Assembly (NCBI GenBank): GCA_020536535.1
Contig: JAHLWZ010000424.1
Location: forward strand, 1-64,000
From: Pelomyxa schiedti
Taxonomy: Eukaryota > Protista > Evosea
Length of the DNA stretch: 64,000 bases
Direction: 5' to 3'
A program made the position numbers and the translations under genes. Below, piece after piece: positions 22,901 to 61,600 of the stretch. The first letter of the stretch is position 1. Every line of letters begins with the position of its first letter. Below the pieces are notes generated by a model that did not search any database, was not told where the DNA came from, and worked only from the letters and a program-made list of their open reading frames with translations.

Positions 22901-25900
22901 ACAGTACAGATTTTCCATGAGCCACAGCAAGTGTCTTGTTGTCAATGGCTAAGGAACCAGCTTTTTCATCAAACGGTGAAGTCCACAACATTTTACCACT
23001 TGCAATATCCCATGCGCTAAAGCTTCTACTAGTGTACGAAATCAGTAGACTTGAATCGTGGGAAAATGTGACATCATGAAGCCTGTCCTTGCTATGACCT
23101 TTCAGCACCCGAATACTACTGTTATCTAGGTCAAAAAGGTATACAGCACCGTTTTTCAGACCCAAAGCAAGGAAGCTATTTTTGCCTGATGAACAAGTTA
23201 TAGTGTCTTCGCATGTTTTCTCAAGATTTTTTTTGCCAGATTCGTAGTCATAGAGGTGAACTGTTTTGTCCAACACAGAGACAAAGTATTTAATGGATGG
23301 TGGCTCAAAATCATCTCCGGTAACACATTCAAAAACACAAGCTTTTTGCCAGTTGGAGGTTCTCCAAACAGTCACAGTGCTCTTTGCTTTGATGGCAAAA
23401 AACTTGGAATCACTTGAGAAACAGTATTTGCTCTTCTTTGGCAGAGTTTCTTTAAGATATTCAACGCCTGTTACAGCATCAATCACATAAACATTTGTAC
23501 TACTTTGCAGTGTAAGGAAGTTCGCTGAGAAGGTGACCAACTCTACCACAACTTCCCTCTTCAAAATCTCAGTGTGTGTGGCAACGTCAAAGACCTGAAC
23601 AAAATCTGCACCCACTCCTAATAAAAACTTGCTATCGGGTGAGAAATGGCCCAGCTCATAAGGTGGCTTTGATTTAGCCAAAACTTTTGTCTTAATCACC
23701 TGCTCACTTGAAGAAAAGTCAACAAGAACAAGCTCTTTTCCTGCAACACTGAGAAGGTTTTTCGTTTTAGCAAATTCACAGTCCTGAACTTCCCACTTAA
23801 ACTTAATTCCTGCTTGCCCAAAATTGACCCCAGCTAGGTTGCAGCCTGTAAAGTTTGAGTTGTGAAGCCAAGTCTGCTGCATGTCACAGCCATGGAGATC
23901 GGCATGATTAAAGTCACATTTGTCAAAAACTGCACAAGTCAGATCCGCCTCTGGGATGCATATACCAGCAAAGTCCCAACCCACGAACGTTTGGTTCGAC
24001 CGAGCGAGTACGGTCATGGCGTTACTTGCAGCAGTTGCTACATTAGGACCCCCAGTGGTTAGGGTGTGTCCCCTTTTCTTTGGTATTGGGGGCTGAGCAC
24101 ACAAATCTTGGAATGTGCCCAAAGTCCGTAATCTGGATTTTCTTATGAACATCACTAGGCCTTCGAAAAGTTGAGATGCCTTCTCTGCGTTCTCATTTGT
24201 GAGTATTTCTGAGAGGAATCTCACAACTTCAGGTTGAATTCGCAGAGGTTGAAGATTAAGAGGCTGGAGATGAGGTGGAGGAATGACAACGTGAGTGCGT
24301 CGTGCCTCCCGCTTCTGAAGAAATTCTCTCACACATAGTCTCATTTTCAGGAGAGAGAATAAAGGGAAAGTGCATTGCTTCTTGGCACTAAGGGCAGCTT
24401 CCTTAAGGCTGGGTGAAAGATTCAAGTTTGATATAGCTTGATGGCAGGCATCAATGAGAGTCTCACCTCGGTTTACAATTTGCAAGAACTCATCTACAAA
24501 GATTTTCTTCTGCCCAGCATTTAAAAATGGCTGAATCTTTTCCATTTCCAGTAATAACTGCTCCAAAAATTCCTGGATTTTTTTTTCTGGAGCCGCTCTG
24601 AGTGTGGCGCTTTGCCGAACTTCATAAAAGTTGGTGTATGGATGTTCAGCACAAAGAATAGCATCATAGCAGATTTTTTGGGCAATGAAATACTCCATGA
24701 TTGTTTTATGGATGAACATAAAGTTATTGCCCTTCTGTTGCAGAGGGCACCCAGCACGTACCAGTTCGATGCAGGGGTTGGTGCAGCTAAAGAAAATTTC
24801 CAGTGGATTGCTGACATCGAGTACATTCACCTTATTTTCATTTTGTCGCCACTTTGGTGTGTAGCGGACCATTGTGGAGCCTTGGCGTAGCATCATAAAA
24901 GCCAATTCCTGACTGAATGTCTTGTAATCTGAAACAATGTCTCCTTTGACCTATGCGAAATAAGACATTTTACTTTCAGGAACATGGATTGGAAATTCCA
25001 ACCTGGAAATTGAACATTACAGAGCCATCTGTCGCAGTCCTGCATGCCTGAAATCTTTCAGGTGTAATCTTAGCTTTTTCTCGCTGGAACCATTGGTCTG
25101 TAAATTTGTCATAGAGTTCCAACCGAGTCAAGGTTGGCTTCTTCTTAGTTTCCTCCCGTAGTTTTCTCTCCATTTCCTCGTGTTGATACTTCTCCACCAA
25201 TGTGGGAAGAATTTCCATAAATATTGTCAGCACAAACGGTGTCTTGAGCAGTTCTTTGACATCTTCCAATTCTTTCTTGTATTCATTATAGAGATCTGCA
25301 CACTGAGAACCAAGTGGGCCGCCATTTACTCGGTACTTTTCAACATAGTCCGCGATTTTTTTTTCATCAAAGGCTTCAATGTACCAGCATAAAACATCCT
25401 CGGTGGAGTCTTTGGTGCGTGAAAAGCTAAACTGGTCGAACCAGTCCGGCCCAATTGCCTCAGGTCTGCTGGTTACAAGTACTTGGGCATTCCATTTATT
25501 GAATTCATTTGTACGACAAAAATTGGCTCCACCCTCAAGGTTCACTTCATCAAATCCATCTAAAATGAGTAGGAGTCGATGCCTCTCGTTCTTAAGCTGC
25601 TCAATGTTCTCCATGGTAAAACCTTGGTCGAATAGATACTTCTCAATCAATTTTTTTCTGGCATCTTTGATGGCTGGAAGTGAGATAAATACAGGGGTAA
25701 CCTGTATAGGGAGATGGAATAAGTGCTAAATTGCCACAGGAGAGGGGTTTACATGCAAGTCATCAAATTGTTCCCATAAAATCTTCTCCAAGCAGCGGCC
25801 GAATAGTGACTTACCAGTGCCAGCACAACCAAGAAGTAGCATTGTCTGTGGCATAGGGCTATCTTCTTCTGCATTGAAGGAGACCGACTTTAGTCCTGAA

Positions 25901-39928: not shown

Positions 39929-40987
39929 TCAAGGAGTAATTCTGGTCCAGGTATAGGACGTCCCATTCATGGTAACTTGGCCAATGCCGTAAAGGTGGTA
40001 TAAGAAGATGGGTGTGGAGAGACGGGACACCCTGAGGGGAATAAGTTTGGCGAATGGTGATAGAGGTTGGTTCTTAATACCTGCTGAGTATGGAGTTACG
40101 TGTCGCGCGAGATTGGGCAATGTCCGCATCAAAGCTTGGAGCCCAGTTACAGTGTTCAATTTGAAGCTCGGTGTGAAGCATATCACCCAAGCACAGCAGC
40201 TCCTTGCCATTGAAGAAAAGCTGGACCCCGATGTGACCCTTTGTATGTCCGGGAGCCGCAAAAGCGGCAATGCCAGGTACAATGGAGTTGGTGATGGGCT
40301 CCGAACTTGGTGGAAGTGGTGAAGGATTGAGCAGGGTCATACGTGAACGAATGAAATGTCCGTACGGCTCTGCCATAGAACCCAGCTTTATATCATAAAA
40401 TTAATAGGAAATGAGGAGGGACGCGGTGTACTGTAGATGACGCAGTGTACTCCTTCTCAGAAAGGTAGAAGTGCGCGTTTGGGAAGTGCACGGCCCCTGC
40501 CGCCTGCAAATAAATCAGTTCGAAACGAAGCAATCAGTAGGATTACATGATCCGCATGCAAATGTGTGAGTATGATAATATCAACAGCCGCGGGATCGAA
40601 TCCAGCCTTCACAATGTTCCGAGCCAATTTTCCAACACGAGGGAAACCAGTCTTTGTTGCTAGTTCTCCCATGCCGCAGTCAATGAGCACAAGGTGCGCC
40701 GGCCTGAGATCGACAATCACGCAGCCCAGACGCAGAGGCAGATCTGCAAAGTCCTTTGATGCTGGGTACCCGTACTTTATCAATGCCCTGTCCAGATCTG
40801 CAGTTGTAGGAGCCGCAGGATCTTGATCGCCGATACGGCCAGTGAAGAATGCCTCAGGAGAAAGATGAACAGTTCTGGAGTACGTTGCAACACCGTCGCT
40901 AACAACTGTGATACTAGTGCCCCCAACGCTAAACGAGATCCAAGTGTCATCATCCATTGCCGTGTTAGTACTAGTCGTAGTAGCCAT
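39929..40987 (-). CDS. Metallo-beta-lactamase-fold hydrolase (methyl-parathion hydrolase/AHL-lactonase-like subgroup)
   Basis: VVSDG, LIDCGMG, LTHLHADH, APGHTKGH, LGDMLH, FDAD, YHLYGIG. Confidence 0.85.
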
Positions 40988-41399: not shown

Positions 41400-43631
41400 A
41401 TGAGAGATGCCGAGCCTGAAGATCCAAAGAACAACTTCGTGTATAGGGCCTTGTATCGTAACAGTAGTTTGGTAGCACGGGTGGAAGAGACTGACTCCGT
41501 GGTGTGTCTCCCACCAACTGCAATTCTCAAGACAATAGTTCCTACTAGTGACACTCTTGGTGAGTTGTTTTTGTTTTTGTTGCTTTTGTTCTACTTTTGT
41601 TTCTTTGGTTACCTTCGTTCATGTGTTTTTGTTTTGCTCTTGGTAGTTAGTTAATTGCTTAACAATCAGAGTCACACATCTTATTTCCATCACGGATGTT
41701 TCTGGGGAGGTACACGACAGCTAATGGGAGAGATGCCATTATAGAACGTGGTGTTGTAACAGTCTCTTCTTCAAAAGAAGAACCTGACCGCCCTGAGGGC
41801 AGTAAAACCCTTCACGCACAACAATCCACCACCACACCAAATGCACTTCCAGTCCCCCAACAACCAAGTCGGGGGCAAAGCACTACCACTACCACTACTA
41901 CTGCCGCTCAGCCGGCCGCACCGGACAAGACAAATTCTATTTCTGCCCGAGTCATAGCTGAAGAAATACATTATCACAAGAACAACAAAGCAACAAGGAT
42001 GCTCTCTATTGATGGCTTACTGTGTGTTGCACAACTTGTAAGATACTTTTCAACTTTCCACTTTCCCATATTGTATAGAACTCCGAACCTTCAGACACCT
42101 CAAAACCGTTGGCGATACCTTCCACATTTAACCAGTGAGTAGTGCCTACAAAGACTAACTTATGTAACTCTGTTAGGTGTAAAGAATTTTTTGAGGGTGA
42201 ACAGGTCAACACGATAGTTTTGCAGAAAATACAGAGGCTTATACACGATTTCAATACAAGCTATTTGATACCTATCCAGAAGGAATTTGCCCCAGAAACT
42301 ATCCAAAAAGTGAAGGAACTGTTGGAAATGGCAACTACTGTGAGTGGTGGGTTGTGCTGGTGTTCGTTCTCGCCATTTCCCCCATTCTTTCACTGTTTTG
42401 ATGTGCAAATATACGATTTCTAATTTCCTTTCTTTTTGCAAGTAGAATTTGTCCTGTGTGAATCCGGACCTCAAACGCCGGCATAATCACGGAACACCTG
42501 AACAAGTAACCGAACTGATTCTTGCCATTGAAAGGTTGTAGGATTTTCTAATCTTCTAAATTAACTTTTACCAGTTTTGTAATGGGGCAGATCCATCCTA
42601 CAGTATGGCCGAAGGTAAATGCCTGGTACCTATCTGAGAATATCTCTCTTCATGCCAGGACATCTAATTTAACTCTGTGCTCCCAAATTGAGAAAAAGGC
42701 AGGACCAACTGACCTTATTCTAAAATGTAACTTGGAAAATAGATTGGGTTCCGCACGGACCTTGCACCAATTGTTCCAGTTGGCAAAGCCGTTCTGGAGG
42801 ATATAGTGACACTAAGCTCCCCCTTTGAGATGTTGAATGCTCTACAAGACTTTCAAGATTGCTATACATGTTACTTAAACTCTGGGCAGTTTTCTGCCAA
42901 ATTTGCTTCTCGATGTAGACACTTTCTCTTTCCTCAATACAAATCTCACAACGACTTAGTCCCAGTCCCAACCAACTCCACACCAAGGGAAGCAATGAGT
43001 GCTGACGCATTACTCCCTCTTATTATTGTATTGGTGTTGCGGGCCAATTTACCCACTTTGTACTCCTCTTTAATTTTTATGGAGAATTTCACTTGCGCGG
43101 ATCTCTCAGTGAATAATATGGGGTATCAACACCGTTCACCTCCTGCAACTAATAAGTTCCAGATACAATCTTGCGAACTTACGAGCAGCCATGGAGTACA
43201 TCATGTCCGAAGGGAATGATGACCCTCAAATTTCCGAGGCCATTTCCAAGCGACTAGCAGAGACCTCGAGAACAATTGCAGCATCACTTTCTAGCACTCC
43301 ACCCCCCTACATCCCATCAATTACTTCAAATAGCACAAGTCCAACAACATCACTTCTGCACACTTCAGCATCCTCACACCCAATCAGCACCAACACAACC
43401 ACACACGCCGCACCAAATACCACCATACCGGACCTTATATCCTCCGCCGTATCTCCAACAAATACCGCCCGGGAAACTAGTCCCGACCCAGTAATCATCA
43501 CACCAAAAGCCATCAGGCCATCAAAAGCACCTGCCAGAGCACCGGATGTTATTAGGGTTCAAGAGGTAACACACTCCCCCTGGGACAGGGTTTCATTTTC
43601 CACACAATCCCGTACCTCCATCAATGAATGA
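41400..43631 (+). CDS. VPS9-domain Rab5-family GEF (Varp/ANKRD27-like N-terminus)
   Basis: N-terminal NNFVYRAL...VVCLP; VPS9 core MSADALLPLIIVLVLRANLPTLYSSLIFMENF; S/T/P-rich tail. The 3' end is approximate. Confidence 0.8.
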
Positions 43632-43733: not shown

Positions 43734-46700
43734 CTACCACTGTGACAGACACCAACACAAATGCATGAAGAAGTGCTCAATAGTAAGTGCAGGGAGTGGT
43801 GGGAGCCCCTCTGTGGGAGAGGGACAAGTGAGTGATGAAGTGTCACTGAACAGAACCTCAGAGAAAAGCAACAGACCCATAAGGCGGTTTAGTACCGGCG
43901 CGGGCTGTGTGTCCCGGTTTGCTAGTGCCTGGTTTATGTGTCCCATCCACTCGCTGCGTGGAATCGGACTGGAAAGTCGGGTGAGGTTGTCTCTAAGGCT
44001 AATGTTGTTTTGTTGCAGTAGGGTGTGGGTACAGGGATGTGGATTCTCGGAAGGGAACCGGGACATCCAGCGGAACAGGGTGGATAAAGCCATGTGGTGC
44101 GAGGGAAAATGAACGGCAGTACCCTGTATTGGGCGTCGGTTTTGGAGCGGATTGTGGGAGAGGAAAGGTGGGGGGGAAAAAAACCTGGTATTGTGAGAGA
44201 CTATGTACATTGGAAAGCAGGGAGGCAACGTAGTCAACTGGTACCAGGCCAATCCCGAGTTGTGTTTCAGGTGAAAAGCCAAGTTCCAAAATTCCAGTTA
44301 AAAGTCTGCACATCCAATCTGCTTTATTCCCGATACCGGTTTTTGTTGAAAACCAAATGAATCCAGGTCTGGAATCCGAGTTAACAGGAGCTAAGTCAAA
44401 TGAAGAATGCCTTACCTCAAAATAACTACTGGTAGGCCGGCAGCAGAAGCTTGCCAAACATGCTTTTCTCCACACCACTTCGAGCATTCATATCCAGATG
44501 ACTCTTTGGCAGCTCTAAAACAACAATCACGGGTGTGCTGAGTAAGGAAAATAGTACTGGAGCGCGAGGAGCTGGCCGTTGTGATCTAAAACAGACTCAG
44601 AGGACATGTGAATAAATAGTCGAGATCTTGACATTATTGCAATGGCAAGAAGTTCTCGAGTCCCCGCCACATTCACATTCCTATTTTGTATAAAGAATTG
44701 TGTAAACTTTGGGAAAAAAACCTTAGAGCAGAATATGAGGCAACATGATTCACACCTGCTCCAATGTGATACACGTACTCGAAGGCGCCTTGCCTAACGA
44801 GAGAACTTAAAAGTGAAGGATCAAGCCCTAGTGATTCTTTTTCCAGATCACCTACAAGTACAACAATTCGTTCGAACATCCTGTCGACGATAATAGAATA
44901 GGAATTAAGTGCCTCATTCAAGCGGTTCTTTGCTGTCTCCAAGGAAGAGCCTCGCACAAGACAGTAAAAGGTGAATTCAGGTGAGAAAGTAGACGTAAGA
45001 GAAGCAAGGACATGTGCCCCAACAAACCCAGTTACACCAGTGATAAATACTCCATGGGTGGTAATGGTTTCGTTAGAAACAAAACTAGATCCCAAGTTGT
45101 AAGTTGATGGGGATGGAAGATCCTGCTCAACTTCACTGCTTGGCACGGAACTATCACTACAGCTTATTTTCTCTGATTGAGGGGAAGTACTGCGGAGCCT
45201 CGAGGCAAGGGAAGAAATTGTGGGGGCCATGTATACATCCCTTACAGTTACGTGAAGGCCATTAGCACTCAGAACATGTACCAATTTCATTGTAAGAAGA
45301 GAGGTGCCACCATAATGGAAGAAGTTGCTGTTGCTGTCCCCCTGGAATGCTCCAAGTACCACCTTCCAGGCATCATAAATCGTTCTCTCTTCCTTTGTAT
45401 TAAAAAGGGGTGTGCAGTGATTACTTAAATCCTTGGAATGGTGTGGTGGAGGGAGTGCCTTCCGGTTGAGCTTCCCTGTGGTTGTAAGGGGAAAATTATC
45501 CAGAAAAGTAAATGTGCTTGGAACCATATACCCAGGAATTCTTTCTTGAAGGTGTTGTTGGAGCTCCTCTTTTAAGGTGCTATGCGATCTTGATGTTGTA
45601 TGGCAAGGCACAACGTAAGCTGCAATGTATTTAATACCGTTATTGTCTTCGAATGGAATAGCCAAGGCAGAGGAAACATAAGGGTGAGAAGTTAAAACAG
45701 ATTCAATTTCCCCCAGTTCGATTCTCTGCCCACTTAGTTTTATTTGGTAGTCCAGTCTTCCACAAAAGGAAATGGTCCCATCGTTCAGATACCTTGCCAG
45801 GTCTCCGCTTCTGTACAACTTGCTATTGTTGTTCATGGGATTTGTAATGAACTTCTGAGCTGTAAGCTCCGGACGCTTTAAGTATTCCCTTCCCACAGCA
45901 ATTCCTCCAAGACAAATTTCCCCAATCGCACCTATTGGGACTGGTTTCAAATTCTTATCAACAATGAACACCTTTACATTGCATATAGGTGTGCCAATCG
46001 GAACACAAGTGGTAGGCAAATCTTGCTTTTTTGCGGTTGGATTCACATCGTAGACACATGTTTCTACTGATGCCTCAGTAGGACCGTATGTATTAAACAG
46101 TTTGACTGTACCAGTGGCGAATCGAAGATAAAACTTTGTCACAGTATCCCAAGGAAGTGAGTCGGCTCCTGTAATTACATATCGCAGGTGTGGTAGATCA
46201 ACGCCTTGAGAGGCCTCGATAAATTCGAGAAGCATTACAGGGACAAGGAAAACAGTGGTAACGTCATTTTCCTTCACAAGAGAGACAAGCGCTTCTGGAT
46301 CTTTGTTTGCACCGTCCGGTGCTATAACACAGCAAGCTCCAACAACCAAAGGCCAGAGAATTTCATCCACTGAAGCATCAAAAAAAACTTCTGAAGAGGC
46401 AAGAAAGCTATCTGTGGGAGTGAACTGGAACTTGTCTTGTAACCACAGAATGTGATTGGTTGTTCCGGCATGCTCGTTAACAGCCGCTTTGGGCTTCCCA
46501 GTCGTGCCGGATGTGAAATAAGCATAAACGGCCTCATTGCCTGTGACGATATTGTGTGGTAGATTCATTTTGAAATTTCCAGCAGGGGCCGTTGAAATAT
46601 CCATCAGGAGAATTTCTTCAATTGTAAAAACAGGGACACCTCGCCAAAATCTATGCTGATCTAAACTGAATTGGGCATTGTCTGTGGGAAAGCAAGTACT

Positions 46701-49700
46701 GAGAAATTTGGTGGCTGCCAAAATTACTTTAGGAGAGAGATCATCCAGGGCGGAATTTAGACGTGAGGAGGGGGAATGAGGGTCAAGGGGCACAAAAGCT
46801 CCCCCAGTTTTGAGTATTCCAAAAATAGTAATAACTATCTCCGGGGATCTGTCAGAAATGATGGGAATAAAGCATTCTTCTCCAACACCAAGCTCTACCA
46901 AAAAATGAGCTATGCGATTTGCGCTTTCATTTAACTGTTCATAGGTCATAGACAAATGGTTATATTTTAGAGCAACGTTAGTAGGTGAACGAGTCGCCCA
47001 CTCTTCAAACATAACATGTACAGGTCTTATATCATGAAACGCTTTTTCAGTATTATTCCAAACGGCTTGTTGGTGGTGTTCCAGTGAAGACAGTACGTTC
47101 ATATCACACACAGTTTGTTCAGGGCAAGATAAAATGCTGGAAACTAGAGTCTCATAATTATGTGCCATTCTTGCAATTGTGTCTTTGTCAAATAACTCTT
47201 TGTCATACTCGAATGCCAGTACTATTTCTCCATCAGACCCTTCATTAGTTTTACTAAACGCTGTCAAGAAGAGGTCACACTTTGCTGTGTTCCCTCCCAA
47301 CAAAGTCAATGGTGTTGATTTGGTCCCATTTAATTCCAGGTCGTGGTTAGTTTCCATTCCAAACATAACTTGAACAAGCGGCTGGAAGTGAATATTTCTC
47401 TCAATTTTGAGAGCTTCGATAACCATATCAAATGGGACATCCTGATAGTTTTGTGCAAGGATCACTTTCAATCTCACACTTTCTAGTACAGTTTTGAACG
47501 TCCAACTTTCATCAATCCTAACTTTAATTGCCAGAGTATTGACAAAAAATCCAATAAGGGCTTCAACACCAGGGTAATGCCTGTTAGCGGTTGCAATACC
47601 AATAACAACTCCCTCACTTGTATCTGATTGCCCGGTATCTCTAGTTTCGAATTGGGGGCTATAGAAATGGAGAAGGATGTGGAACACAGTTAAAAGAGTT
47701 ACAAAAGGAGTGGCACCACATTTTATCCCAAAGTTTATAAGCCGAGATGCAGTATTAGCTGAAAGACAGTGAGAAACGATTCCGGCCCTGTATGTGCGAT
47801 TCGTGGAGCGCGGTCTATCGATTGGTAAGTCTGCTATCTGGGGAGCACATTCAAGTGCTTGCTTCCAGTAATCGAGTTGCTTGGAGAGGTCATTCTGAAG
47901 CCAGTCTCTGTGCCAAAATGCAAAGTCGGCATATTGGAAGGGGAGGGCTGGAGGGAAGTATGAGTTCCCAGACACCAAACCATTGTAAAACCGAGAGAAT
48001 TCCGTCAAAAACAAGTAATCTGACCAAGCATCATAAACTATGTGATGAATATTGAATAAAAGAAGTGTCCTACTACCAGTGAACCTGCATACCAAAACTT
48101 TGAGCAGTGGCCCAGTTTCTAGATTGAAAATGAAAGATAACTCCCGATTGACAATATCCTGAGTTTCGGAGGCATTGTCAATTTGTATTTCTTGGAAAGA
48201 TATTGCACTCGCAGCTTCTTCAGGCTCTTTGATGACTTGCCATACTTCACCTGCTTGTTCAACAAAAGTAGTCCGAAGTATCTCGTGTCTTTTTGTGATA
48301 CATGTGACGGCATCCAGAACAAAATTGAAGGGCAAAGTACCATCCACCCAAAACCCACGTAAGATACAATACTGAGAAGACATGGGAAGAAGTCTATCTA
48401 GAAAATAAATTCTCTGTTGGGAATACGAGAGGGGAATGTGTTTGGGACGCTTATGGGCTGTCAGCTTTGGGAGTTCACTGCATAACTTTTTCATGTGCAA
48501 AAGCTCTATGATTCGTGTTATTGTTCTTCCTTCAAAGAAGTCTTGCAGGTGAACTTCAAGCCCTCTCTCATGAGCACATAATACAATACGCAATGCCAAT
48601 ATTGAATCTCCCCCTATCTGAAAGAAATCACTATGGAGGCCAACATTTGTCCCTTGGGGAAGACACTCCCGCCAACACTGCGCTAGGAGTTGCAACTCTA
48701 CGGAGAAAAAAGAAAGAGTGGAACTAGTATTTTCAGTTGGTTGAGGAATATGCAACTGTGGAGCAGGGAGAAGTTTCCTATCGATTTTCCCTGTTGTTGT
48801 TGTTGGAAATGATTCCATTATGGTAAATGTATTAGGAATCAGGTTAGGTGGGAGTTTGGAAAGGAGATATGTGCTAAGTTCCTGTGCACAATTCTCACGG
48901 ATAGACGTATCTCTGAGCTGGATGTAGGCTGCAATACTAGGTCTACCAGAATCTTCCCTCATAGAAACCACAGCTTGCAATACGTTTTGGTGCTCCTGTA
49001 GTGCAACTTCAATCTCGCCAAGCTCAATTCTTATCCCATGAAACTTTATCTGGAAGTCAATGCGTCCGTGGAATTCAATTTCCCCATTTGGAAGGTATCG
49101 GCCAAGATCACCCGTTTTGTACACCCTGTCATGTGAAAACGCAGTTTGTACATAACTTTTTCTTGTCAGGTCAGGTTGCATTAGATAGCCTGAACCAAGG
49201 GCAGCTCCACCAATATAAATTTCTCCTACTACACCAACGGGTACAAGACTCAGGTAATTATCCAAAATGAAGATCTTCACGTTGCTGATGGGTTTCCCCA
49301 AGGTGACAAAAGAACTTGAGTACTGGTCAGATGCAACACAATCAATCATAGTAACTGCCACAGCAGTTTCAGTTGGGCCATAGACAGAAACGAGGTGCGC
49401 ATCTTTACCAAAAACATCATAGAAATCTTTCACCCAGCTTGAAGGCAATGCCTCCCCACCAGAAAAGAAATAACCATGAAGTGGTGGCACATCAGAGGAG
49501 TATTTCTTTCCTGCATCAATGAACTCTCTCAGTATTGTGGGTACAAAGAAAGTCATGGAAATTTGATTGGAAACAACGGCATCAAGAATCTGCCTTGCAT
49601 CTTGTATGTGGGGAGCAACAACAATAACAGTAGCGCCAACAACCAAGGGCCACATAAATTCTGAGACAGACGAATCAAAAAAGAAGGGTGATTTGAAAAG

Positions 49701-52700
49701 GCTGGCTTGGGTTACGTGCAGTGGGTAGCGACTCTGAAGATACAAAATGAAGTTAAGAATGGCGGAGTGCACATTTACTGCCGCTTTAGGTTTTCCTGTT
49801 GATCCCGACGTAAATAGTGCATAAATTGGATCAGAACCAGTGGCTTGGCTGTGTGGATTCTCAACGCAGAGGGAACGATTCCCTATGATTCCTTGAATTG
49901 ATACAACATTTAATGGAGGGGTAGCTAATGGAATGCAGGAAATGTAAACTTGGTCAGACGCTAGAATGACATCAGAAGACATATCCTCAAGAATAATGGA
50001 GATTCTGGGCTTTCCCCAATGCGGATCGATTGGCACGTAAGCTGCCCCTGCTTTCAGTATTCCCAATATCCCAATCACCATCTCCATTGATCGTACAGCA
50101 ATAAACGGAACGAAAGTTCCTCTCCCAATGCCGGCTGATAGTAAGAAATTGGCTACTTTATTTGCCTCACAGTTAAGGTTACTGTAAGTCATTTGTTGTT
50201 GCTCAAATTTGAGTGCAACCGTGTGTGGTATCCGTGATGCTTGCTCCTCAAAGAGGAGGTGTACAGTCTTTCCATTTTTCAATTCGGAATAGTTCTCGAG
50301 TGTAGTATTCCATATTTCCAGTTGCATTAAATCTACATGTGGCACTATTGGTAGTTGATATACTTTCTGGGCAGAATTGCTTGACACAAGACTTGACACA
50401 AGTTCTGTTAGGCTGTCCCCCATTCTCGAAATTGTGTTTTCGTCAAATATGTCTTGAGCATATTCAAAGTGAAATGTAAAGCTGGAATCTGTTGCGGATA
50501 CACGCAAAGTGAGATCAAACTTGGCTACTTCAGAAGATTCTGCCTCAAGCTGTAGGACCTCATGAATTCCTTGAAGCATGAAGTTGTTGGAAGCAAATGG
50601 TTGCCAATCATCCATCACAAACATCACTTGGACCAATGGTAACGTTTGTAGGTTGCGTCCAACCCCAAGTTGATCTACTATCCAATCAAAAGGAATGTCC
50701 TGCGCATCTTGAGCTTCCAACACCTTCTTTCTCACTTTTTTGATTATTGAATTGAATGGTTTTTCGTCGCATACGCAATGCCATATTGGAAGTGTGTTAG
50801 AAAAAAAGCCGATCAGGTTTTCCACTCCCGGGTAGTGTCTGTTTGCTACAGGAATTCCAATCACGATTCCTTCCTGCTCCTCCTTCCATCTATGTGGGCT
50901 ATATCTGTGCAGAAGGAGATGAAAAAGGGAAAGAGTGGTCACAAAGAGGGTGGAATTATAAGGCATGCCAATGGCCCTCAACTTATCTGAAATGGAAGGA
51001 GGTAAATGTTTGTAGTAGTGCCCAGCCTTGTATGTTCTATTTGTTCGTGGTCGGTCAAGAGGAAGTGCTGATACATGTGCAGTGTGTCGAAGAGCCTTTT
51101 GCCAATAGGAAAGTTGTACATTGGTTACAGTGCTCTTGAGCCACTCTCTCTGCCACAAAACAAAATCAGCATACTGATAGGGCAGAGGAAAAAGAGGTTG
51201 TTGGTTTTCACAGGCAGAGTGAAGGGAGTTCAACTCCTTATTATACAGCAGCGATAACTCCTTGAAAAAGACTACCACTGACCAGCCATCCATTATTATA
51301 TGATGCATATTTACAATCAAAAGTAGCTGCTGATTGTCAAGATGACCAATTATCAGGTGAATCAGCGGGCCCTGCAACAAATCAAAGGTGCTCCGTCCTT
51401 TGAAATTGATATAGCAGGTAGCTTTCTCGATTGCATTTCTGTCTCCTCCAGTTATGTCAATCTCTTGGATGTCCATAGACTGGCTACAATTCTCACTAGG
51501 GAGAATGATCAAAAATGGGCCATCTTTATCTTCTCCAAATAATGTTCTTAGAGATTCATGGCGCTGCACAAGCTGTATAAAGGCTGATTTGAGGCAAGTA
51601 CTATTCAGATTGCCTGACATAAGGGCAGCACTTGCTTCGCTGTACTTTGTAGTATTAGGGGAGAGCTTTTCAAGGAAATACAGCCTCTGCTGATTGTAGG
51701 ATAAGGGAAGTCTATCTGGTCGTTGTATTTTTGGGATTGTCTTTAACTTGGGTCTTTCATTGATTGTCACATGAAAAAGATCCTTAAGGGTTGTGGCGCA
51801 ATATACTGATGATGGTGAAACGGGACAATCGAAAATCTGTGCCAGTCTGAGACTATTTGTTAGGAAAAAAGTTCAATTTGAGACCACTTTACCTCGTCGC
51901 AATGAGAAGGGCACTCAAAGAGTTGAGACCCAAATCTAACAAGGGCTTATCAATGGGAATGACCCCTTCTTTAAAGGATAGCACTTCGGAAACCACTTGC
52001 TGCATGACTGAAAGTAAAGAGCTGACAGCTTCACGATACGGTCTTTGAGTCGAATGATTAGGCCTGGGCTCCAGGTTGAACAGGGAGGATGAAATGCCAA
52101 GTTCTTTTACACATAATGTGTGTGTCATGAAGCCTATCCCACCAGGACCAACATCATGCACTTCCACAGACAAGTACACACCAACGGCAGTCCTACATCA
52201 AGGAATCAGCAATAAATCTATGGGGAAAAAAAATACCTCACAATTTCTAACCAGTGTATAGGCTTCATAAAATGAGTAACTAAATTCCAGAAGTCACTGG
52301 ATTCCTGCACAGGTGTTTCTTAGAATAGAAGTGGCGCAAATGGAATTTGGAACCTTTGAGCCTTTACACCCAGCCGAAGCTCTGGAAACCTGCAAGTAGA
52401 GCTATCAATTGACCGGAATGTATCTGTAGGAGTTGTTGTCAGGAACCTGATTTAGGATCGGCTCCTGATAGAATGGAGTATGAAAAGCATTGTGGACAGG
52501 TAAATATTTTGAATCCTGGGGAAAAAGGTCGTGGAGATTTGATAAGGTTTGTGGATGCCCACCAACAACAGAAATCAATGGACTTAGACTAATTGCTTCC
52601 TGGCACGGTTCCATTGGATTTTTGTTAACTGCTGATATGGCTGATATCAAATTTGGAAGTGGAGTCTTGGAAACAAGTAGCATCCAAGGTTCCTTAGATA

Positions 52701-53554
52701 ACTGACTGCTCAATTTGAGAGTTTCAGAAGTATAGAAAGCACCAAGTTCCACTAAGTTTTCAACAAGATGCAGGCTGTTTGACATGAAGTTCTCCATTGA
52801 AGTGGAATGTTGAATAACATGTGCAGAGAACATTCCAACAGAGTAACCAATGAAGTGATCAAAAGAATTACGAAACGAATAGTATCTCTTGGAGCCATTG
52901 ACATCAGAACTAGGTACAATTCCCAGGTCAGCAGACAAAGTAGCAACCAGGAAGTTCCCAAGTGAATACGTGCAAGTCAAAAACAAGGACAAAAAACTCA
53001 TCTCCAGTATGTGCAAGGAAGGACACTCCCCATCAGTTGTTATCCTTTTTTGTTCAAAAAAAAGTGAGTAGCCATACCTGCATTTTATGCTCTATTTAGA
53101 AATTTACAAAAAAATTTAATTGTTTAGACTTTTCTTTCCCCTCCTGATTTCTTATTTACCATGAGAAAACATCAACAGGGCGCTTCAGATTCACACAGGC
53201 CCAAATGGAATCATCTCCCAACTTGGCCTCAAGCGCCCCGGACGCCGCGTGCATGCTCCTCTCAACAAACTCCCTCACCAGGCCTCGGTCCCCATCTCCC
53301 ATAATTTCACAGTAGCAATCCTCGCCGCCGTGGTCCGAGCCTCCCCTCCCCGGCGTCGCGGCAGGCGGGCCGCCAGTGGCCGCCGCCCACCGCGACATCG
53401 CTCCCATAATAACCCCCTTGATCTCCCCTGGCTTCGGCGGCAGCCCCCCAAGCACGCAAATCCTGCCCCGAGCGGCTTCCGTCGTCTTCGTGCTCCCTTC
53501 GAGGCACCGCCCCCGTTGAGGCGCCACGTCTCGTTCGCCGTTGCTGCCGCTCAT
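43734..53554 (-). CDS. Nonribosomal peptide synthetase: starter acyltransferase-T-C-A-T-C-A-T-thioester reductase
   Basis: AT GYSVG and LPVHNAFH; T0 LGLNSL; C1 HHIIMDGWS; A1 FTSGSTGKPK, YGPTE, YKTGDL; T1 IGGDSI; C2 HHIVYDAWS; A2 FTSGTTGKPK, YRSGDL; T2 YGGTSL; R ITGVTGFVG, HIGAGVNH, GYECSKW, RPG. Confidence 0.93.
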
Positions 53555-56088: not shown

Positions 56089-58346
56089 TCAGTGAGTGGC
56101 AGCACATACGCCGTCCATCTCATAAGACCTAATCCAGAAATCGCTGACGAATTCCTTAAACACCTCCCACTGGGGTTCGTCCAGGGTACATTCCTTTCCA
56201 ACACGGTCCTCTTTCGTACCAGTTATGGCCACGACACCCCCTTCTTTGAGTTTGGTTAATGCCTTCTTCACCTGTGCATACAAGGTGTTTATAAATGGAA
56301 TATGCTGCGGGCAAGAACTAGAACTTACTTTGTATATGTCTCTCTGTGTGATAGTTCTGGGGATGTGAGATACGGTGTCCTGATACAAGAACAAGGCACC
56401 GCTATTCCAGTGGCTGATGATTGTCTCGCTGTCCACCTGGAAATCTTCTGGTATCAACACAATCGACCCTGACGAGGAATGGTTACTGATAAACCCTCTG
56501 CCTAGCTTCACCATCTCACTTGTTTTTGTTTGCTAAATGATAATTTATAATTATAATGTGTCTTTTTTGCAAGCAGGCAACACACGCCAATTTTTTTGAC
56601 ATGTGCACAAGGGAAATTTTTTTTTTGCAACGAAATCAGAGAAAGGACAAGAAAGCCCGGCGTCAATAATCTCCTCTGTTGTCCACCTGGAAATCCTTCC
56701 AGAATCCGTACAATCGACCCGACTAACTTTAGCTCTCTTCATCGCTATCTTCGCCACTATCCTCTGGATCGTCAGACTCTTCGTATGGGTGTTTGGGAGT
56801 TGTGACAGGGTGCAGTGCCATCNNNNNNNNNNNNNNNNNNNNNNNNNNNNNNNNNNNNNNNNNNNNNNNNNNNNNNNNNNNNNNNNNNNNNNNNNNNNNN
56901 NNNNNNNNNNNNNNNNNNNNNNGAATCCGTACAATCGACCCGACTAACTTTAGCTCTCTTCATCGCTATCTTCGCCACTATCCTCTGGATCGTCAGACTC
57001 TTCGTATGGGTGTTTGGGAGTTGTGACAGGGTGCAGTGCCATCAGATCTCGAGATGTTGCCCCCCACACATGTGTGAAAATCAGGCTTATGACGTTCTCT
57101 GGGAGCCTTGGCAGCACCGGCGTAGATCTGTTGGTCGCCAGAATCCTGAACAGTGTGCAGATTGACAATCTCGCAGATCTGGGCGCCAGTCGGTGCTTGC
57201 TTGGGGTCCACCGGGGGTACATTGCAGATAACAGACCCGCCGGACTGGGACTCTGGTCGCACAGCTGCTTCGTTGTGAGAATCTTGGGGCCTTCGTGGTA
57301 CTGAGGTGAAGTATCAGCCCCATGCAATATCTTGCAAAAAAGTACGTGAGAAACTTCTCTGTGACTGCTGCTATTTGTATACGAACCAGTAGAGATACAA
57401 GATCCGGGCGGTTATCAATGATGGCCCTGTGCAGAGCCACTTCAGAGACTGGCACGTTTCTGATCTTGCTGACGTAATTAGGATCTCGGGGATCGTCGGT
57501 CCCAGATTCGGTGTCAGGTATATTTTCATGCTTAACGTGGTTGGTCACCAGATTCGCATTGGCACCTCTCTGGAATCTTGTAAATAGACTCACCAAAAAA
57601 ACTGGTAAGTAGAAACCTCAAGGAGAGTTTGGGCCATCGGAAGGTTATTATTTGCACAAGCGAGGAAGAGAGCCGTTTGCATTGTGTTGGTTCTTGGTCC
57701 ATATTCAGACTGCCCACTTTGGTTTTTTTGGTTTCACTGAAATCGGGATAGGGAAGAAGTTTTGTACCTATCAACAAAAAGACTATCAACCTTGGCCCCT
57801 GCATCGAGAAGGGCGTTCAAAAAAGCCACATTTCCGGAAATGACAGCTTCATGAATGGGGTACTCCATTCTTTGTCCATCATACCTTCAATGAAGAAAGG
57901 GGAGTAAGGATAATGAAGCAGAACTGGTTTCGATTGACCTCATAGTATGTGCATCACGTAAATGTGGGATGTTGGGATCTGCTCCATGCTTGAGGAATAA
58001 TATCTGGAGGTCAGCGTTGTCCGTGCCCTGAATCATCTGGAATGCGGTTTCCTCGACACCACACCCTCGCCAGTCGTAATCCTCATACCTGAATTGAGTG
58101 GTAGGGATATGCAGGACAAGAAAGCAAGAAGGACGTTTTACTTACTTTGCATTCACCTTTGCACCGTGCTCCAGAAGTAATGTTATTGCCTCTACCCTTG
58201 ATGGACTATTCCAAGCCTTTATTGCTAGATGTATTGGACTCACCCTAGTCCTTGCGCCCCAAGTTCCCTCTTTAAAACTCTAAAACCCCTTAGTAATAGC
58301 GACAGACAAAATAGAACATAACAGCAACAACAACAACAGCAAAAAA

Positions 58347-58686: not shown

Positions 58687-61600
58687 TTACAAATAGAAAA
58701 GGATTCTGTGGATGATGTCCAGAGGAAGATCTCTCATCAGACAATCCTCGTTGTCGCCGTTCTTGAATTTGGCAATAAACAGCAATCTGGCAATGTTCCA
58801 CGCCACTATTGGCTTGTTAGAACTTATCCTTTGCGGAGTGGGTGTGGCAAGCAAAAGGCACTCACCAAAAGATGGCGGTGTCGGAACCGGCAAGATTTCT
58901 GCAGAATTTGTCACTTCGACTGTGCAATGCCACGGCCCGCGATCTGCAACAAAGTCCAAGATGTCAGTCCCGGAACATCCATTTGATCCCAGTGGAAGCC
59001 ACATTTCGAGGCTTCTGTGGTTGCTCGTGCTCAGTCTCAGCATATTGGATTGTATCTGGCTGTAATCAGGAAATGGGTACTTAATTATTGCATACCTCTT
59101 GTTCCGTGCGTGCACAGGACCACAGTCTCACGTCCCTAATGAAACCTTTGCACCCAAATGTGGCAGTAGATCCGGCGCCATCCCAATCTTTTGTGGCTCC
59201 TATTTTAAGTAGCTCTGTTGCGCCAAATGTTACTGGTGATGAACCAGCATCAGTAGTGGCTACAATGTCTCCATTTAGATATCTGCACCAAAAAGACATC
59301 AGGTTTTTTTAAGAATTAACGAAGTTGGAAACTGATTGCAAGTGGGAGGGAAAAATACAAAGTAATTCGGCCAGAATCATAAACTCCACATAAATGCCCC
59401 CAATAGCTCTGTATGAGAAAAGTTACTATTATCGTCACGAGGTAAGGAAGAAAAAAAAAAGCAGACATACATTAGGTAGCAACCCCGCTGTCACACATGT
59501 TTCCACAGAATTGACATAAAACATGACACTGCCTGTTGGAGTTTTTTTGGAATAGGCCAGTGGCAGTTGATATGTGCTTACCATTATTGCTAAAAAATCC
59601 AAATCCTTTTTGACTTGAGCCCTTTGTAATAATAATCTGCAAAAAATAAACAATTTGTCGAAAGGAGNNNNNNNNNNNNNNNNNNNNNNNNNNNNNNNNN
59701 NNNNNNNNNNNNNNNNNNNNNNNNNNNNNNNNNNNNNNNNNNNNNNNNNNNNNNNNNNNNNNNNNNNGTTGTGACCCTTCATTGCTCAGAAGATCATGAT
59801 CTACGGGAAAGTCATTACTGCCAAGTGGAAGCCAGCAGACAAGGTCAGGTGAACGTCTATCAGATGCCGAAAGAACATTCATGTTTTCCATAATCTGACG
59901 AATAAATTTCAAGAGAAGGAAATGGGAGAGAATAAATACCTGAGATGGAGTTCTTGCACATCTCCAGATTCTTACATCTTGAACAGAGCCAGTGAAGCCA
60001 TATGGATGTGGTGCATTGTTGTACGTGCAGTAACCAATGTGAACAGGAGCTACATTGGGTATAATGGCCGCAGCCCCATTAACACTTGATTGACGACTGC
60101 CGTTGATGTACCTATTTCATATTATATGTGGAATAGAGGCAGTATTGCCAAGGAGAAACCATACAGTTGAGTTTGGCCATTGTCAAACACACCACAAATG
60201 TGCGTCCAAAGCCCCTATTGGTTTGTAAGTGGATAAATCTCCCGTTACTTAGGAGTACTTGCCGCTGTTAGTATATATGATGGAGTTACTTGCCCACTCC
60301 AGCCATTTACAAAGAAGATTACAGTTCCAGCTGTAGGTGTGAACGAGGAATCAAAAGAACTTTCTCAAGTACCACTCTGGGCAATTAAGCCATAGCCATT
60401 CATGTCCCATCCTTCTGTTAACTTTGAAACGTACACCTTCAATGTTCGATGTCACGAAAATAATATTAACACGACATTATATAAACATACAGCCCAAGTT
60501 GGTAAATCAGAGGTATCCTGACAGAAAAGCCAACACTCAACTGTTAGAGTACGATCTGGGTTTAGAGAGTCATGGTGCGGTATAAGGAGCCCAGTGTCCG
60601 GACTTGGAAGAAACAAGCACCTGCTCGAACTTAAGAAGGTGGGATGAAGAATAGTTTGTAGGAAGGTGGTGAAACCTTCCTCTACTCGCATTGTTACGTT
60701 CTAAACTTGCTACTTCTGCTGGAATATGGACAGGCTGCATAGAGAAAATAAGTTCGCATAAAGGGTGAAGGGGTTCTCTACCATTTTTGGAGAATCCTGA
60801 GGTGCGGCAGCGTAGTTGACCATGAATGGACTCCCTGTTTGTGTTACACGATGACCGTGTGAGCTCCTGTCAGCCAAAAAATTGCCGTCATTAGTATTAA
60901 GTGGAAGCCAGAGAAGAAGTTTTGAGAAGTCATCTTGAGAAACTCCATTTGCCAAACAATTTGTAATCTTTTGTTCTTACATTTTAGTGTAGGAGTGATT
61001 GCATACCTCTTGAGGTGTTCTGGCACAATTCCAAATTCTCACATCTTTCACAAATCCAGTAAAACCGTAAACTGTCTCATACGTCCGCCATTTTGTATAC
61101 CCAAGTCGAATACTGGAGTCGGAGCTGTGCGTGATTTCCCTGAATTCCTCATTTCTTGCTGTCTTCTCACATATTCCATTCAGATAACTTGCCAAGAAGT
61201 GACCTCTTAGAAACAAAGATAGTAGCATACATTTTGACTTCACCTTTGTCAAAGACACCACAAACGTGAGTCCATGTATTCTGCAATATTTTACGTGAGT
61301 GGGTTTCAGAGCAACTGGAGTTCCTACTTGCGGGAGTGCAACACATTCTGTGTGGAGTCCAGACCATCCTCCAACGAAGAAATATATGTTCCCAGCTTTG
61401 GGGATGGGTCATGTAAGAGCATGTAATACAATGCAGAAGCTACTACCTGATGTACCAATCAAGCCATAACCAGTAGTATCCCATTCCTGGTTAAGTTTGG
61501 CCACGTATACCTTTTCCACGTTAAGAATGCATAGTGAGGACAGGGTTGATGGGCATACTGGATATCCAGAGGTATCACCAGGATATCTGTAGAATATATA

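What the first reader, a model, noticed from the sequence alone, without database searches (positions are those of the whole stretch)
43734..53554. Self-contained acyl-loading two-module NRPS with reductive release in a protist
Seen: AT-T-C-A-T-C-A-T-R in one intron-containing gene embedded among eukaryotic housekeeping genes, with catalytic motifs intact (three carrier Ser, both HHxxxD, R-domain GxxGxxG and YxxxK). Known: multi-module NRPSs are rare outside bacteria and fungi, and R domains release aldehydes or alcohols. Inference: an undescribed amoebal pathway to an N-acyl dipeptide aldehyde or alcohol. Best candidate for a new system in this window.
Basis: partly seen in the sequence, partly recalled or inferred. 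Interest (0 to 1): 0.88.

Follow-up and report, generated by a model that had tools for sequence, protein, structure and literature searches.

The report
Amoeba acyl-primed two-module peptide synthetase
The anaerobic amoeba Pelomyxa schiedti carries a spliced nuclear gene for a roughly 3,100-residue enzyme that should load an acyl group, add two amino acids and release the product by reduction; this layout is not described in the literature I could search, but its expression and the integrity of its loading domain remain unproven.

Summary
On the minus strand, 53554-43734, nine exons joined by eight GT-AG introns give one open frame of 3,117 aa. The genome is Pelomyxa schiedti: a GenBank P. 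schiedti NRPS maps at 100% to another contig.

The gene is native. Its codon usage matches its neighbours. It lies between a PP2C gene and a VPS9-domain gene. Introns split both T0 and R at matching profile positions. Its C domains group with P. schiedti paralogs, apart from the 45 bacterial C domains sampled.

It is the most divergent member (about 39% identity) of a family on about 17-19 contigs. Earlier agents of this scan noted that family on other contigs of this genome. On the contigs with C domains, only this one has a reductase domain.

Caveats:
- A conserved 16-codon piece of the acyltransferase is 1 nt out of frame. The frame stays open only through a 109-nt intron that skips it.
- Substrate guesses (hydrophobic, then basic) are weak.

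The likely product is an N-acyl dipeptide aldehyde or alcohol. This is a new variant of a known kind.

The parts
53160..53554 (-). Exon 1: start codon and the N-terminal part of the SAT-type acyltransferase. It is unusually GC-rich (65%).
   Evidence: The ATG at 53554 is the first in frame after the stop of the upstream PP2C gene. The ICVLGG... and ...VDVFSW segments resemble the SAT N-terminus in paralogs by eye (C753, and KAH3760971.1); BLAST and Pfam gave nothing significant. The intron lies after a Trp, as in the annotated paralog.
52414..53077 (-). Exon 2: SAT core, with the nucleophile GYSVG (52848-52834) and the His motif AFH (52488-52480).
   Evidence: Pfam SAT PF16073, E 3.3e-12 and 47 bits. 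The Atlas feature search gives FAS central AT/SAT as top cluster, score 0.96. A family profile hits only the fungal FAS beta acetyltransferase region and the norsolorinic acid synthase SAT in the PDB, both weakly. The residues are invariant in the paralog alignment A1.
52305..52413 (-). A 109-nt GT-AG intron (model i). It contains a 48-nt relic (52353-52306) homologous to a conserved SAT segment in paralogs but 1 nt out of frame with the next exon.
   Evidence: Coordinates and frames are. The relic VPNSICATSILRNTCA lines up with paralog segments PVPNSAAFISTSLNADTS and PVPDSPAFISSFRQADIS. The assembly holds no second copy.
52237..52304 (-). Exon 3: a C-terminal SAT helix region (ESSDFWNLVTHFMKPIHWLEIV).
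   Evidence: It is homologous to a paralog exon (IEAAEFFEQMQRDGIQNSINW) with an intron at the same upstream boundary. It is in frame in the model.
51893..52192 (-). Exon 4: the end of SAT (VEVHDVGPGG), a linker, and the first half of carrier T0 with Ser in GLNSL (51930-51916).
   Evidence: PP-binding profile positions 4-38 of 67 end at the exon's last residues. It is similar to the T0 exons of six paralog loci.
44722..51852 (-). Exon 5 (7,131 nt): second half of T0, then C1 (about 51755-50373), A1 (50315-48723), T1 (48695-48498), C2 (48470-47073), A2 (47045-45423), T2 (45395-45198) and the N-terminal third of R (from about 45065).
   Evidence: Pfam; motifs; colinear at 39% identity with the GenBank P. 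schiedti NRPS P0117; PDB matches for C1 and C2 and for R.
44558..44680 (-). Exon 6: R domain, NAD_binding_4 profile positions 110-143 (NVNVAGTRELL...SSES).
   Evidence: Pfam profile 110-143 follows directly on 1-109 of exon 5. tblastn with a bacterial R domain agrees.
44416..44514 (-). Exon 7: R catalytic Tyr and Lys (GYECSK, 44495-44478).
   Evidence: PF07993 profile positions 174-207; motif.
44185..44368 (-). Exon 8: R domain, profile positions 204-256.
   Evidence: Pfam NAD_binding_4 204-256.
43734..44123 (-). Exon 9: the C-terminal subdomain of R and the stop codon (TAG, 43736-43734).
   Evidence: It is open and in frame in the model. No Pfam hit for this piece.

Best explanation
This is a native nuclear gene of Pelomyxa schiedti encoding a single 3,117-aa megasynthase, SAT-T0-C1-A1-T1-C2-A2-T2-R.

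Proposed mechanism:
1. An Sfp/AASDHPPT-type PPTase converts the three carriers to the holo form.
2. The SAT-type acyltransferase (Ser in GYSVG, His in AFH) takes an acyl group from acyl-CoA, or from the ACP of a separate FAS or PKS, and puts it on T0.
3. A1 loads a probably hydrophobic amino acid on T1, and the LCL-type C1 N-acylates it.
4. A2 loads a second, possibly basic, amino acid on T2, and C2 forms the N-acyl dipeptidyl thioester.
5. The terminal SDR-type reductase releases it with NAD(P)H as an aldehyde, possibly reduced further to the alcohol.

Because the N-terminus is acylated, pyrazinone cyclisation is blocked. The product would therefore resemble leupeptin-like N-acyl peptide aldehydes.

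Shown here: domain order, motifs, gene structure, native origin and family membership. Inferred: every chemical step, the substrates and expression.
For: - Domains and motifs.
- One open spliced frame with eight GT-AG introns.
- Introns split T0 (PP-binding profile cut at position 38) and R (profile 1-109, 110-143, 174-207 and 204-256 on successive exons), so the exons only make sense joined.
- Genome identity: the GenBank P. schiedti protein P0117 maps at 100% to contig C753.
- SAT-like exons lie upstream of the NRPS gene on at least 8 other contigs, followed by a T0 exon where checked. GenBank proteins KAH3766394.1 and KAH3764772.1 show SAT-T-C-A.
- Native origin: RSCU correlation of 0.87 with neighbours and matching GC3; eukaryotic flanking genes; the nine Pelomyxa C domains form one group with SH-aLRT 100 against 45 bacterial ones.
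- C1 and C2 best match LCL-type C domains (Txo1, Txo2, TycC). Surfactin synthetase entries, which I take from memory to be the starter C domain, score much lower.
- The N-terminal part of R best matches the thioester reductases MxaA, a PKS R domain and AusA.
- PPTase genes are present in the genome.
- A-domain pocket residues, read by motif position, are DSSFFGVVAK and DADFIGTVEK.
Against:
- The gene is absent from the protein collections searched, so no public gene model supports it.
- A conserved SAT segment (52353-52306) is 1 nt out of frame with the next exon. The open model skips it through the longest intron of the gene, 109 nt, which may damage the acyltransferase fold. If the 60-nt intron is used instead, translation stops at 52298-52296.
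- The AlphaFold model of the SAT exon had low confidence (pLDDT 46.7), so the fold is not confirmed.
- The A-domain codes match no code I know, so the substrates are guesses.
- Sequence cannot tell aldehyde release from alcohol release.
Confidence: 0.55

Rival explanations
1. The gene is a decaying or partly disabled paralog. The frame defect in the SAT region is real, so either only a truncated SAT fragment is translated or the protein carries a crippled loader. The C-A-T-C-A-T-R part would then be unprimed or silent.
For: - The conserved segment 52353-52306 has a 1-nt frame offset and no homopolymer that would suggest a sequencing error.
- This is the most divergent family member, at about 39% identity and on long branches.
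- No public gene model or RNA-derived protein was found.
- Earlier scan notes report broken alleles of other family members.
Against: - Outside that one spot, 9,354 nt stay open across nine exons with every catalytic motif intact. That is unlikely for a long-dead gene.
- A canonical GT-AG intron restores the frame, and its acceptor lies at the intron position conserved in paralogs.
- Codon usage is host-like.
Confidence: 0.2
2. The enzyme is not self-contained. Its SAT domain works as a trans-acylase that collects a finished fatty or polyketide chain from the ACP of a separate PKS or FAS. That is what SAT domains do in fungal NR-PKSs, and what it presumably does in the PKS-fused paralogs. The true pathway would then include an unlinked PKS, and the product would be a lipo-dipeptide.
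For: - At C753 the same SAT type follows an HR-PKS-type ACP directly.
- Earlier notes describe PKS-SAT-NRPS fusions in this genome.
- Pfam assigns the domain to the starter-unit:ACP transacylase family.
Against: - No PKS or FAS gene lies within the 64-kb window.
- The fungal FAS acetyltransferase, the other close relative, takes its substrate from CoA.
- Nothing in the sequence tells the two acyl donors apart.
Confidence: 0.3
3. The gene is bacterial contamination or a chimeric join in a single-cell, whole-genome-amplified assembly.
For: - P. schiedti harbours bacterial endosymbionts, and its assembly comes from single-cell libraries (PMC10579272).
- The nearest non-amoebal relatives of the C domains are bacterial, at 35-38% identity.
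Against: - Eight spliceosomal introns, two of them inside conserved domains.
- Host-like GC, GC3 and codon usage.
- Eukaryotic genes within about 160 nt on either side on the same contig.
- No N run inside the gene.
- Clustering with other P. schiedti paralogs.
Confidence: 0.02

Closest known systems
Pelomyxa schiedti SAT-primed NRPS paralogs
   Same: They share the SAT-type acyltransferase, T0, C and A order, an intron position after the SAT N-terminal exon, and C domains that fall in one clade.
   Different: Identity is only about 39%. This copy starts with SAT and has no PKS in front. It is complete on one contig. On the contigs with C domains, it is the only one with a terminal reductase. 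Its SAT has the frame anomaly.
Dimodular R-terminated NRPSs: AusA/PznA of Staphylococcus aureus, and the gut-bacterial dipeptide aldehyde synthetases (Guo et al. 2017, as reviewed in PMC8210680)
   Same: Two modules and a terminal thioester reductase release a dipeptide aldehyde. An N-acyl tail is reported to stabilise the aldehyde against pyrazinone formation. AusA R is among the PDB matches.
   Different: Those are bacterial genes without introns. From my own knowledge, not tested here, their acylation comes if at all from a starter C domain using acyl-CoA. Here the primer is a fused SAT-T0 didomain and an LCL-type C1. T2-R identity to anything found is at most 34%.
SAT domain of fungal non-reducing PKSs (norsolorinic acid synthase PksA) and the acetyltransferase of fungal FAS beta
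   Same: It belongs to the same Pfam family (PF16073). The GxS/CxG nucleophile and downstream His are present. The nucleophile motif aligns in the weak PDB profile hits.
   Different: It is fused to an NRPS T-C rather than to KS-AT-PT-ACP or a FAS. It is very divergent, with no significant sequence hit outside P. schiedti.
Fungal lipopeptide initiation by T0-C starter modules loaded in trans (emericellamide EasA with the acyltransferase EasD; echinocandin EcdA with EcdI). This comparison is from my own knowledge and was not tested here.
   Same: An acyl group sits on an N-terminal carrier and is condensed with the first amino acid by a C domain.
   Different: There the loader is a separate protein (an acyltransferase or acyl-AMP ligase). 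Here it is a fused SAT domain.

Membership tests
Modular (type I) NRPS | Condensation domains with the HHxxxD(G) motif | tested here: met
   PF00668, two stretches, E 2e-162. HHIIMDG and HHIVYDA are present.
Modular (type I) NRPS | Adenylation domains with core motifs A3, A5, A7, A8, A10 and Asp235 | tested here: met
   PF00501 and PF13193, two each. The motifs are TSGSTGKPK and TSGTTGKPK, YGPTE, YKTGD and YRSGD, GRxDxQxK..G.RIE, and GKIDRK and GKLNRK. FFDSS and FFDAS carry the Asp.
Modular (type I) NRPS | Carrier domains with a phosphopantetheinyl Ser after each loading step | tested here: met
   GLNSL (T0), GGDSI (T1) and GGTSL (T2), all within PP-binding matches. T0 has Asn where Asp is usual.
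Terminal thioester reductase (R) domain, SDR, PF07993 | Rossmann motif TGxxGxxG and the catalytic Tyr-x3-Lys | tested here: met
   TGVTGFVG and GYECSK are present. The profile is covered colinearly at 1-109, 110-143, 174-207 and 204-256 on four exons. Best PDB matches are MxaA, a PKS R domain and AusA R.
Terminal thioester reductase (R) domain, SDR, PF07993 | NAD(P)H-dependent two- or four-electron release of the thioester | not testable with these tools
   This needs an enzyme assay. The presence of Tyr argues against a redox-inactive Dieckmann-type R* domain; that rests on general knowledge.
SAT / fungal-FAS-type starter acyltransferase (PF16073) | Profile score above the curated cut-off | tested here: met
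   47 bits against a cut-off of 22.8. Paralogs score 29 and 36 bits. The Atlas feature search gives FAS_AT_central/SAT at 0.96.
SAT / fungal-FAS-type starter acyltransferase (PF16073) | Nucleophile in GxS/CxG plus a catalytic His | tested here: met
   GYSVG and AFH are present. The flanking Gly-Tyr and Gly of the GY(S/C)xG motif and the His are invariant in alignment A1, and one paralog has Cys as the nucleophile (GYCGG).
SAT / fungal-FAS-type starter acyltransferase (PF16073) | Complete, uninterrupted acyltransferase fold | tested here: inconclusive
   The AlphaFold model of the core exon reached only pLDDT 46.7, so I ran no fold search. A conserved C-terminal segment is out of frame, or skipped in the open model.
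Starter (Cs, lipoinitiation) condensation domain | C1 closer to the Cs clade than to LCL elongation domains | tested here: not met
   C1 scores 198 bits to Txo2 and 142 to TycC, but 84 to the surfactin synthetase entry, which I take from memory to be the starter C domain. C1 groups with C2 and the paralog elongation C domains. This was a PDB-based test only; no NaPDoS-type classifier was available.
AusA-like or gut-bacterial dipeptide aldehyde synthetases | Orthology: close sequence relationship with the same architecture | tested here: not met
   The best T2-R relative is 34% identical and lies in a 3,643-aa metagenomic NRPS. The C domains sit outside the sampled bacterial set. The enzyme works like these synthetases but is not a member of their family.

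The most novel reading that the evidence does not exclude
Archamoebae may have evolved their own class of megasynthases in which a FAS/SAT-type transacylase primes NRPS modules. This gene would be the one complete, stand-alone, reductase-terminated member found so far, making a leupeptin-like N-acyl (hydrophobic)-(basic) dipeptide aldehyde. An anaerobic amoeba full of endosymbionts could use such a compound to control proteases of prey, symbionts or itself.
Probability: 0.3. Interest if true: 0.78.

Novelty: new variant of a known kind. Interest (0 to 1): 0.6.

Why it matters
To my knowledge multi-module NRPSs are known almost only from bacteria and fungi. I found no paper in the searchable library that links Archamoebae, Mastigamoeba or Pelomyxa with NRPS or PKS genes.

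This gene is a compact, complete test case, with one polypeptide, two modules and a defined start and release. It would let someone ask three questions:
- Does a fungal-type starter transacylase prime peptide assembly?
- What small molecule does an anaerobic, symbiont-bearing amoeba make?
- How did a probably bacterial NRPS lineage become an intron-bearing, expanded eukaryotic gene family?

If the product is an N-acyl peptide aldehyde, it would be a protease-inhibitor scaffold from a new source.

Tried and rejected
- Whole-exon homology search: it timed out, so I replaced it with region searches.
- RNA-derived protein fragments covering the SAT exon: none found among proteins of 112-355 aa.
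- Fold of the SAT exon: the AlphaFold model had pLDDT 46.7, too poor for a fold search, so I ran none.
- Sequence search of the PDB with the SAT exon: nothing significant. A four-sequence profile gave only weak hits, at E 0.039 and 0.51.
- A second allele to resolve the frame offset: the assembly holds only one copy.
- DNA around P0117 through the look-up of encoding contigs: not on record.
- Splice alternatives around 52305-52452: I tested 23-, 24-, 32-, 52-, 57- and 99-nt introns and a 6-nt remnant by reading frames. All run into stops or are too short. Only the 109-nt intron keeps the frame.
- Rejected readings: bacterial contaminant (introns, codon usage, flanking genes), a Cs-type starter C domain, and a redox-inactive R* domain (Tyr and Lys are present).
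- The joined, spliced protein was never sent to a search or folding tool. Exons were searched separately by reference. Joining was done only inside my own scripts, to check the frame and map motifs.
Full report
**What is there**

The finding lies on the minus strand. One 7.2-kb open exon (51872-44676) carries two Condensation, two AMP-binding plus AMP-binding_C and two PP-binding domains, and the first 109 profile positions of NAD_binding_4. Small upstream ORFs carry a SAT domain (PF16073, 47 bits against a curated cut-off of 22.8) and half a PP-binding domain. Small downstream ORFs carry the rest of NAD_binding_4.

Reading the sequence and checking by coordinates, I obtain nine exons:
- 53554-53160
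- 53077-52414
- 52304-52237
- 52192-51893
- 51852-44722
- 44680-44558
- 44514-44416
- 44368-44185
- 44123-43734

They are joined by eight GT-AG introns of 82, 109, 44, 40, 41, 43, 47 and 61 nt.

- SAT: GYSVG and AFH
- T0: GLNSL
- C1: HHIIMDG
- T1: GGDSI
- C2: HHIVYDA
- T2: GGTSL
- R: TGVTGFVG and GYECSK

The joined protein was never sent to a search or folding tool. Exons were searched one by one by reference. Joining was done only in my own scripts, to test the frame and map motifs.

**Do the exons belong together?**

The support is structural.
- The T0 carrier is cut by the 40-nt intron at PP-binding profile position 38 of 67, at the last residues of exon 4. Its remaining helices must be the first roughly 30 residues of exon 5, just ahead of C1.
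- The spacing from the T0 Ser to the start of C1 is about 56 aa, like the roughly 62 aa in an intron-less paralog.
- The R domain profile runs 1-109, 110-143, 174-207 and 204-256 over exons 5, 6, 7 and 8, with exact hand-over at the first boundary.
- Exon 1 has no Pfam hit and no significant BLAST hit, but by eye it resembles the SAT N-terminus of paralogs. It ends after a Trp, where the GenBank model KAH3760971.1 also has its first intron.

**Organism and origin**

A region search with C1 returned bacterial NRPSs at 31-38% identity, plus one eukaryotic protein, a GenBank 'non-ribosomal peptide synthetase [Pelomyxa schiedti]' (P0117). P0117 is colinear with the big exon at 39% identity. It maps at 100% over all 2,381 residues to contig C753 of the window's own assembly. 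The genome is therefore P. schiedti, or the same assembly: 52.4 Mb in 5,337 contigs, with the window on contig C424.

The gene is native rather than a contaminant:
- It has eight spliceosomal introns.
- GC (42.8%) and GC3 (38.8%) equal those of neighbouring ORFs, and relative synonymous codon usage correlates at r = 0.87 with them.
- A PP2C gene ends about 155 nt upstream on the same strand. A VPS9-domain gene converges about 100 nt downstream. An MBL-fold gene, an endosulfine-like ORF and an NLR-like gene lie further out.
- No N run lies inside the gene.

In a quick IQ-TREE of 54 C domains, the nine Pelomyxa domains form one group with SH-aLRT 100 against the 45 best bacterial matches. Those nine include this gene's C1 and C2, which sit on long basal branches. 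This fits one old acquisition followed by expansion in the amoeba lineage.

**The family**

Condensation domains occur on about 19 contigs of the genome, and the P0117 search hit 17 contigs. SAT-like exons lie just upstream of the NRPS gene on at least 8 other contigs, followed by a T0 exon where checked.

phmmer with the SAT core exon against 1.84 billion representative proteins found only three P. schiedti clusters and one spurious bacterial repeat protein. The three clusters are:
- KAH3766394.1, with the order SAT-T-C-A
- KAH3764772.1, with SAT, T, C, A and a second C and T
- KAH3760956.1 and KAH3760971.1, of which KAH3760971.1 is a stand-alone SAT

At C753 the SAT follows an HR-PKS-type ACP, so the GenBank model of P0117 appears truncated at its 5' end.

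Earlier agents of this scan described this SAT-NRPS and PKS-SAT-NRPS family on other contigs. I re-tested the core claims (organism, SAT upstream of the NRPS, a PKS-type ACP upstream of one SAT, a Cys variant of the nucleophile) and they hold.

This copy is the most divergent member, at about 39% identity. It begins directly with SAT. Among the contigs with C domains, C424 is the only one with a PF07993 reductase. Thioesterases sit on C198 and C983. Many paralog contigs are short, so these counts are lower bounds.

The two main P. schiedti papers do not mention NRPS, polyketide or secondary metabolism. The library holds no paper linking Mastigamoeba with peptide synthetases or Archamoebae with polyketide synthases.

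**The weak spot**

After exon 2 (…YRYIP) the frame meets a stop. Paralogs continue with a conserved segment (PVPxSxxxISSxxxxDxSx), then an intron, then the exon that matches our exon 3.

In this gene a 60-nt GT-AG intron (52413-52354) would lead into a clearly homologous segment, VPNSICATSILRNTCA (52353-52306). That segment is 1 nt out of frame with exon 3, which starts at 52304, exactly at the ancestral acceptor. Read through, it stops at 52298-52296.

The only in-frame solution I found is a single 109-nt intron (52413-52305) that skips the segment. There is no homopolymer at the site and no second allele in the assembly.

Three outcomes remain possible:
- The SAT lacks a conserved 16-17-residue strand.
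- The assembly has a 1-nt error.
- The loader is broken in this copy.

**Domain types**

The SAT assignment rests on four results:
- Pfam.
- A language-model feature search whose best cluster is FAS central AT/SAT at 0.96.
- A weak single-sequence hit to the fungal FAS beta subunit that aligns the nucleophile motif with its GHSQG motif.
- A four-sequence profile whose only PDB hits, both weak, are the fungal FAS beta acetyltransferase region and the SAT of norsolorinic acid synthase, again with the nucleophile motif aligned.

The AlphaFold model of the core exon was poor (pLDDT 46.7), so I ran no fold search.

C1 and C2 both match the LCL-type domains best (Txo1, Txo2, TycC, fuscachelin). The surfactin synthetase entries, which I take from memory to be the starter C domain, score far lower. 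C1 is therefore not a classical acyl-CoA-using Cs domain, which fits a carrier-bound acyl donor on T0.

The N-terminal part of R matches MxaA, a PKS R domain, an NRPS R domain, AusA R and carboxylic acid reductase. Tyr and Lys are present, so a redox-inactive Dieckmann-type domain is unlikely; that rests on general knowledge.

Pocket residues, read off by their positions relative to motifs A4, A5 and A10 (GrsA numbering, from my own knowledge), are DSSFFGVVAK for A1 and DADFIGTVEK for A2. A1 resembles branched or aromatic hydrophobic codes. A2 has acidic residues at positions 239 and 331, as codes for Lys, Orn and Arg do. This agrees with another first-stage note on this window, but it is only a low-confidence guess.

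An AASDHPPT/Sfp-type PPTase is present on C561, with a second ACPS match 3.6 kb away.

**Mechanism and comparison**

The most likely function is N-acylation of a dipeptide and reductive release. The steps would be:
1. SAT loads T0.
2. C1 joins the acyl group to amino acid 1.
3. C2 adds amino acid 2.
4. R releases an aldehyde, or after a second reduction an alcohol.

It works like the dimodular R-terminated synthetases. AusA makes a dipeptide aldehyde that cyclises to a pyrazinone, and gut-bacterial enzymes make dipeptide aldehydes that inhibit proteases and are stabilised by an N-acyl tail (PMC8210680; see also PMC7586950 among the hits). It is not their ortholog: the T2-R part is at most 34% identical to anything found.

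The priming unit works like a fungal SAT or the FAS acetyltransferase, but it is fused to an NRPS. I did not find that combination described. Whether the acyl group comes from CoA (self-contained) or from a separate PKS or FAS ACP cannot be told from sequence.

**Verdict**

This is a new variant of a known kind: a real, native, apparently complete amoebozoan NRPS with an unusual fused starter acyltransferase and reductive release. It belongs to a lineage-specific family that this scan has met before on other contigs. Expression, the SAT reading frame, the substrates and the product all remain to be shown.

Noticed in passing
window 53160-53554; L008 2282-2575: Exon 1 of the gene is 65% GC (GC3 72%), against 43% and 39% for the rest of the gene and its neighbours, and its codon usage does not correlate with theirs. 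The first exon of the stand-alone SAT paralog KAH3760971.1 is likewise 63-71% GC. The same region in the PKS-fused paralog, where it is internal, is not. GC-rich first exons may be a feature of this genome.
   Followed up: partly
window 52306-52353: A 48-nt relic of a conserved SAT segment lies inside what must be treated as an intron to keep the frame open. It is 1 nt out of frame with the next exon, whose start coincides with the intron acceptor position of the paralogs.
   Followed up: yes
G000 contig C753 (L018 about 1063-2699; L001): The GenBank model of the P. schiedti NRPS P0117 (2,381 aa) seems truncated at its 5' end. An HR-PKS-type ACP and SAT exons lie directly upstream on the same strand.
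   Followed up: partly
G000 contig C561, about 20850-21450 and 24953-25231: Two matches to the 4'-phosphopantetheinyl transferase family lie 3.6 kb apart, the first preceded by an AASDHPPT_N domain. This may be a tandem pair of Sfp-type PPTases that could serve the many carrier proteins of this genome.
   Followed up: partly
G000 contigs C530, C158, C795, C1068, C889, C798 and others: More than 20 loci carry NAD_binding_4 domains, some in open frames of 1,000-1,300 aa. These could be A-T-R-type carboxylate reductases or fatty acyl reductases. None is on a contig where I found a C domain, except C424.
   Followed up: no
window 14151-14250, 56823-56922, 59668-59767: Three runs of exactly 100 N, which are scaffold gaps or withheld stretches. 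None touches the gene.
   Followed up: no
window 40460-40987 (-), 41696-43631 (+), 53712 to about 55800 (-): The neighbours are an MBL-fold gene, a VPS9-domain gene that converges on the NRPS 3' end with about 100 nt between the two stops, and a PP2C phosphatase gene with a Thr/Ser-rich tail ending about 155 nt upstream of the NRPS start. No obvious tailoring or transport genes, so there is no sign of a gene cluster.
   Followed up: partly
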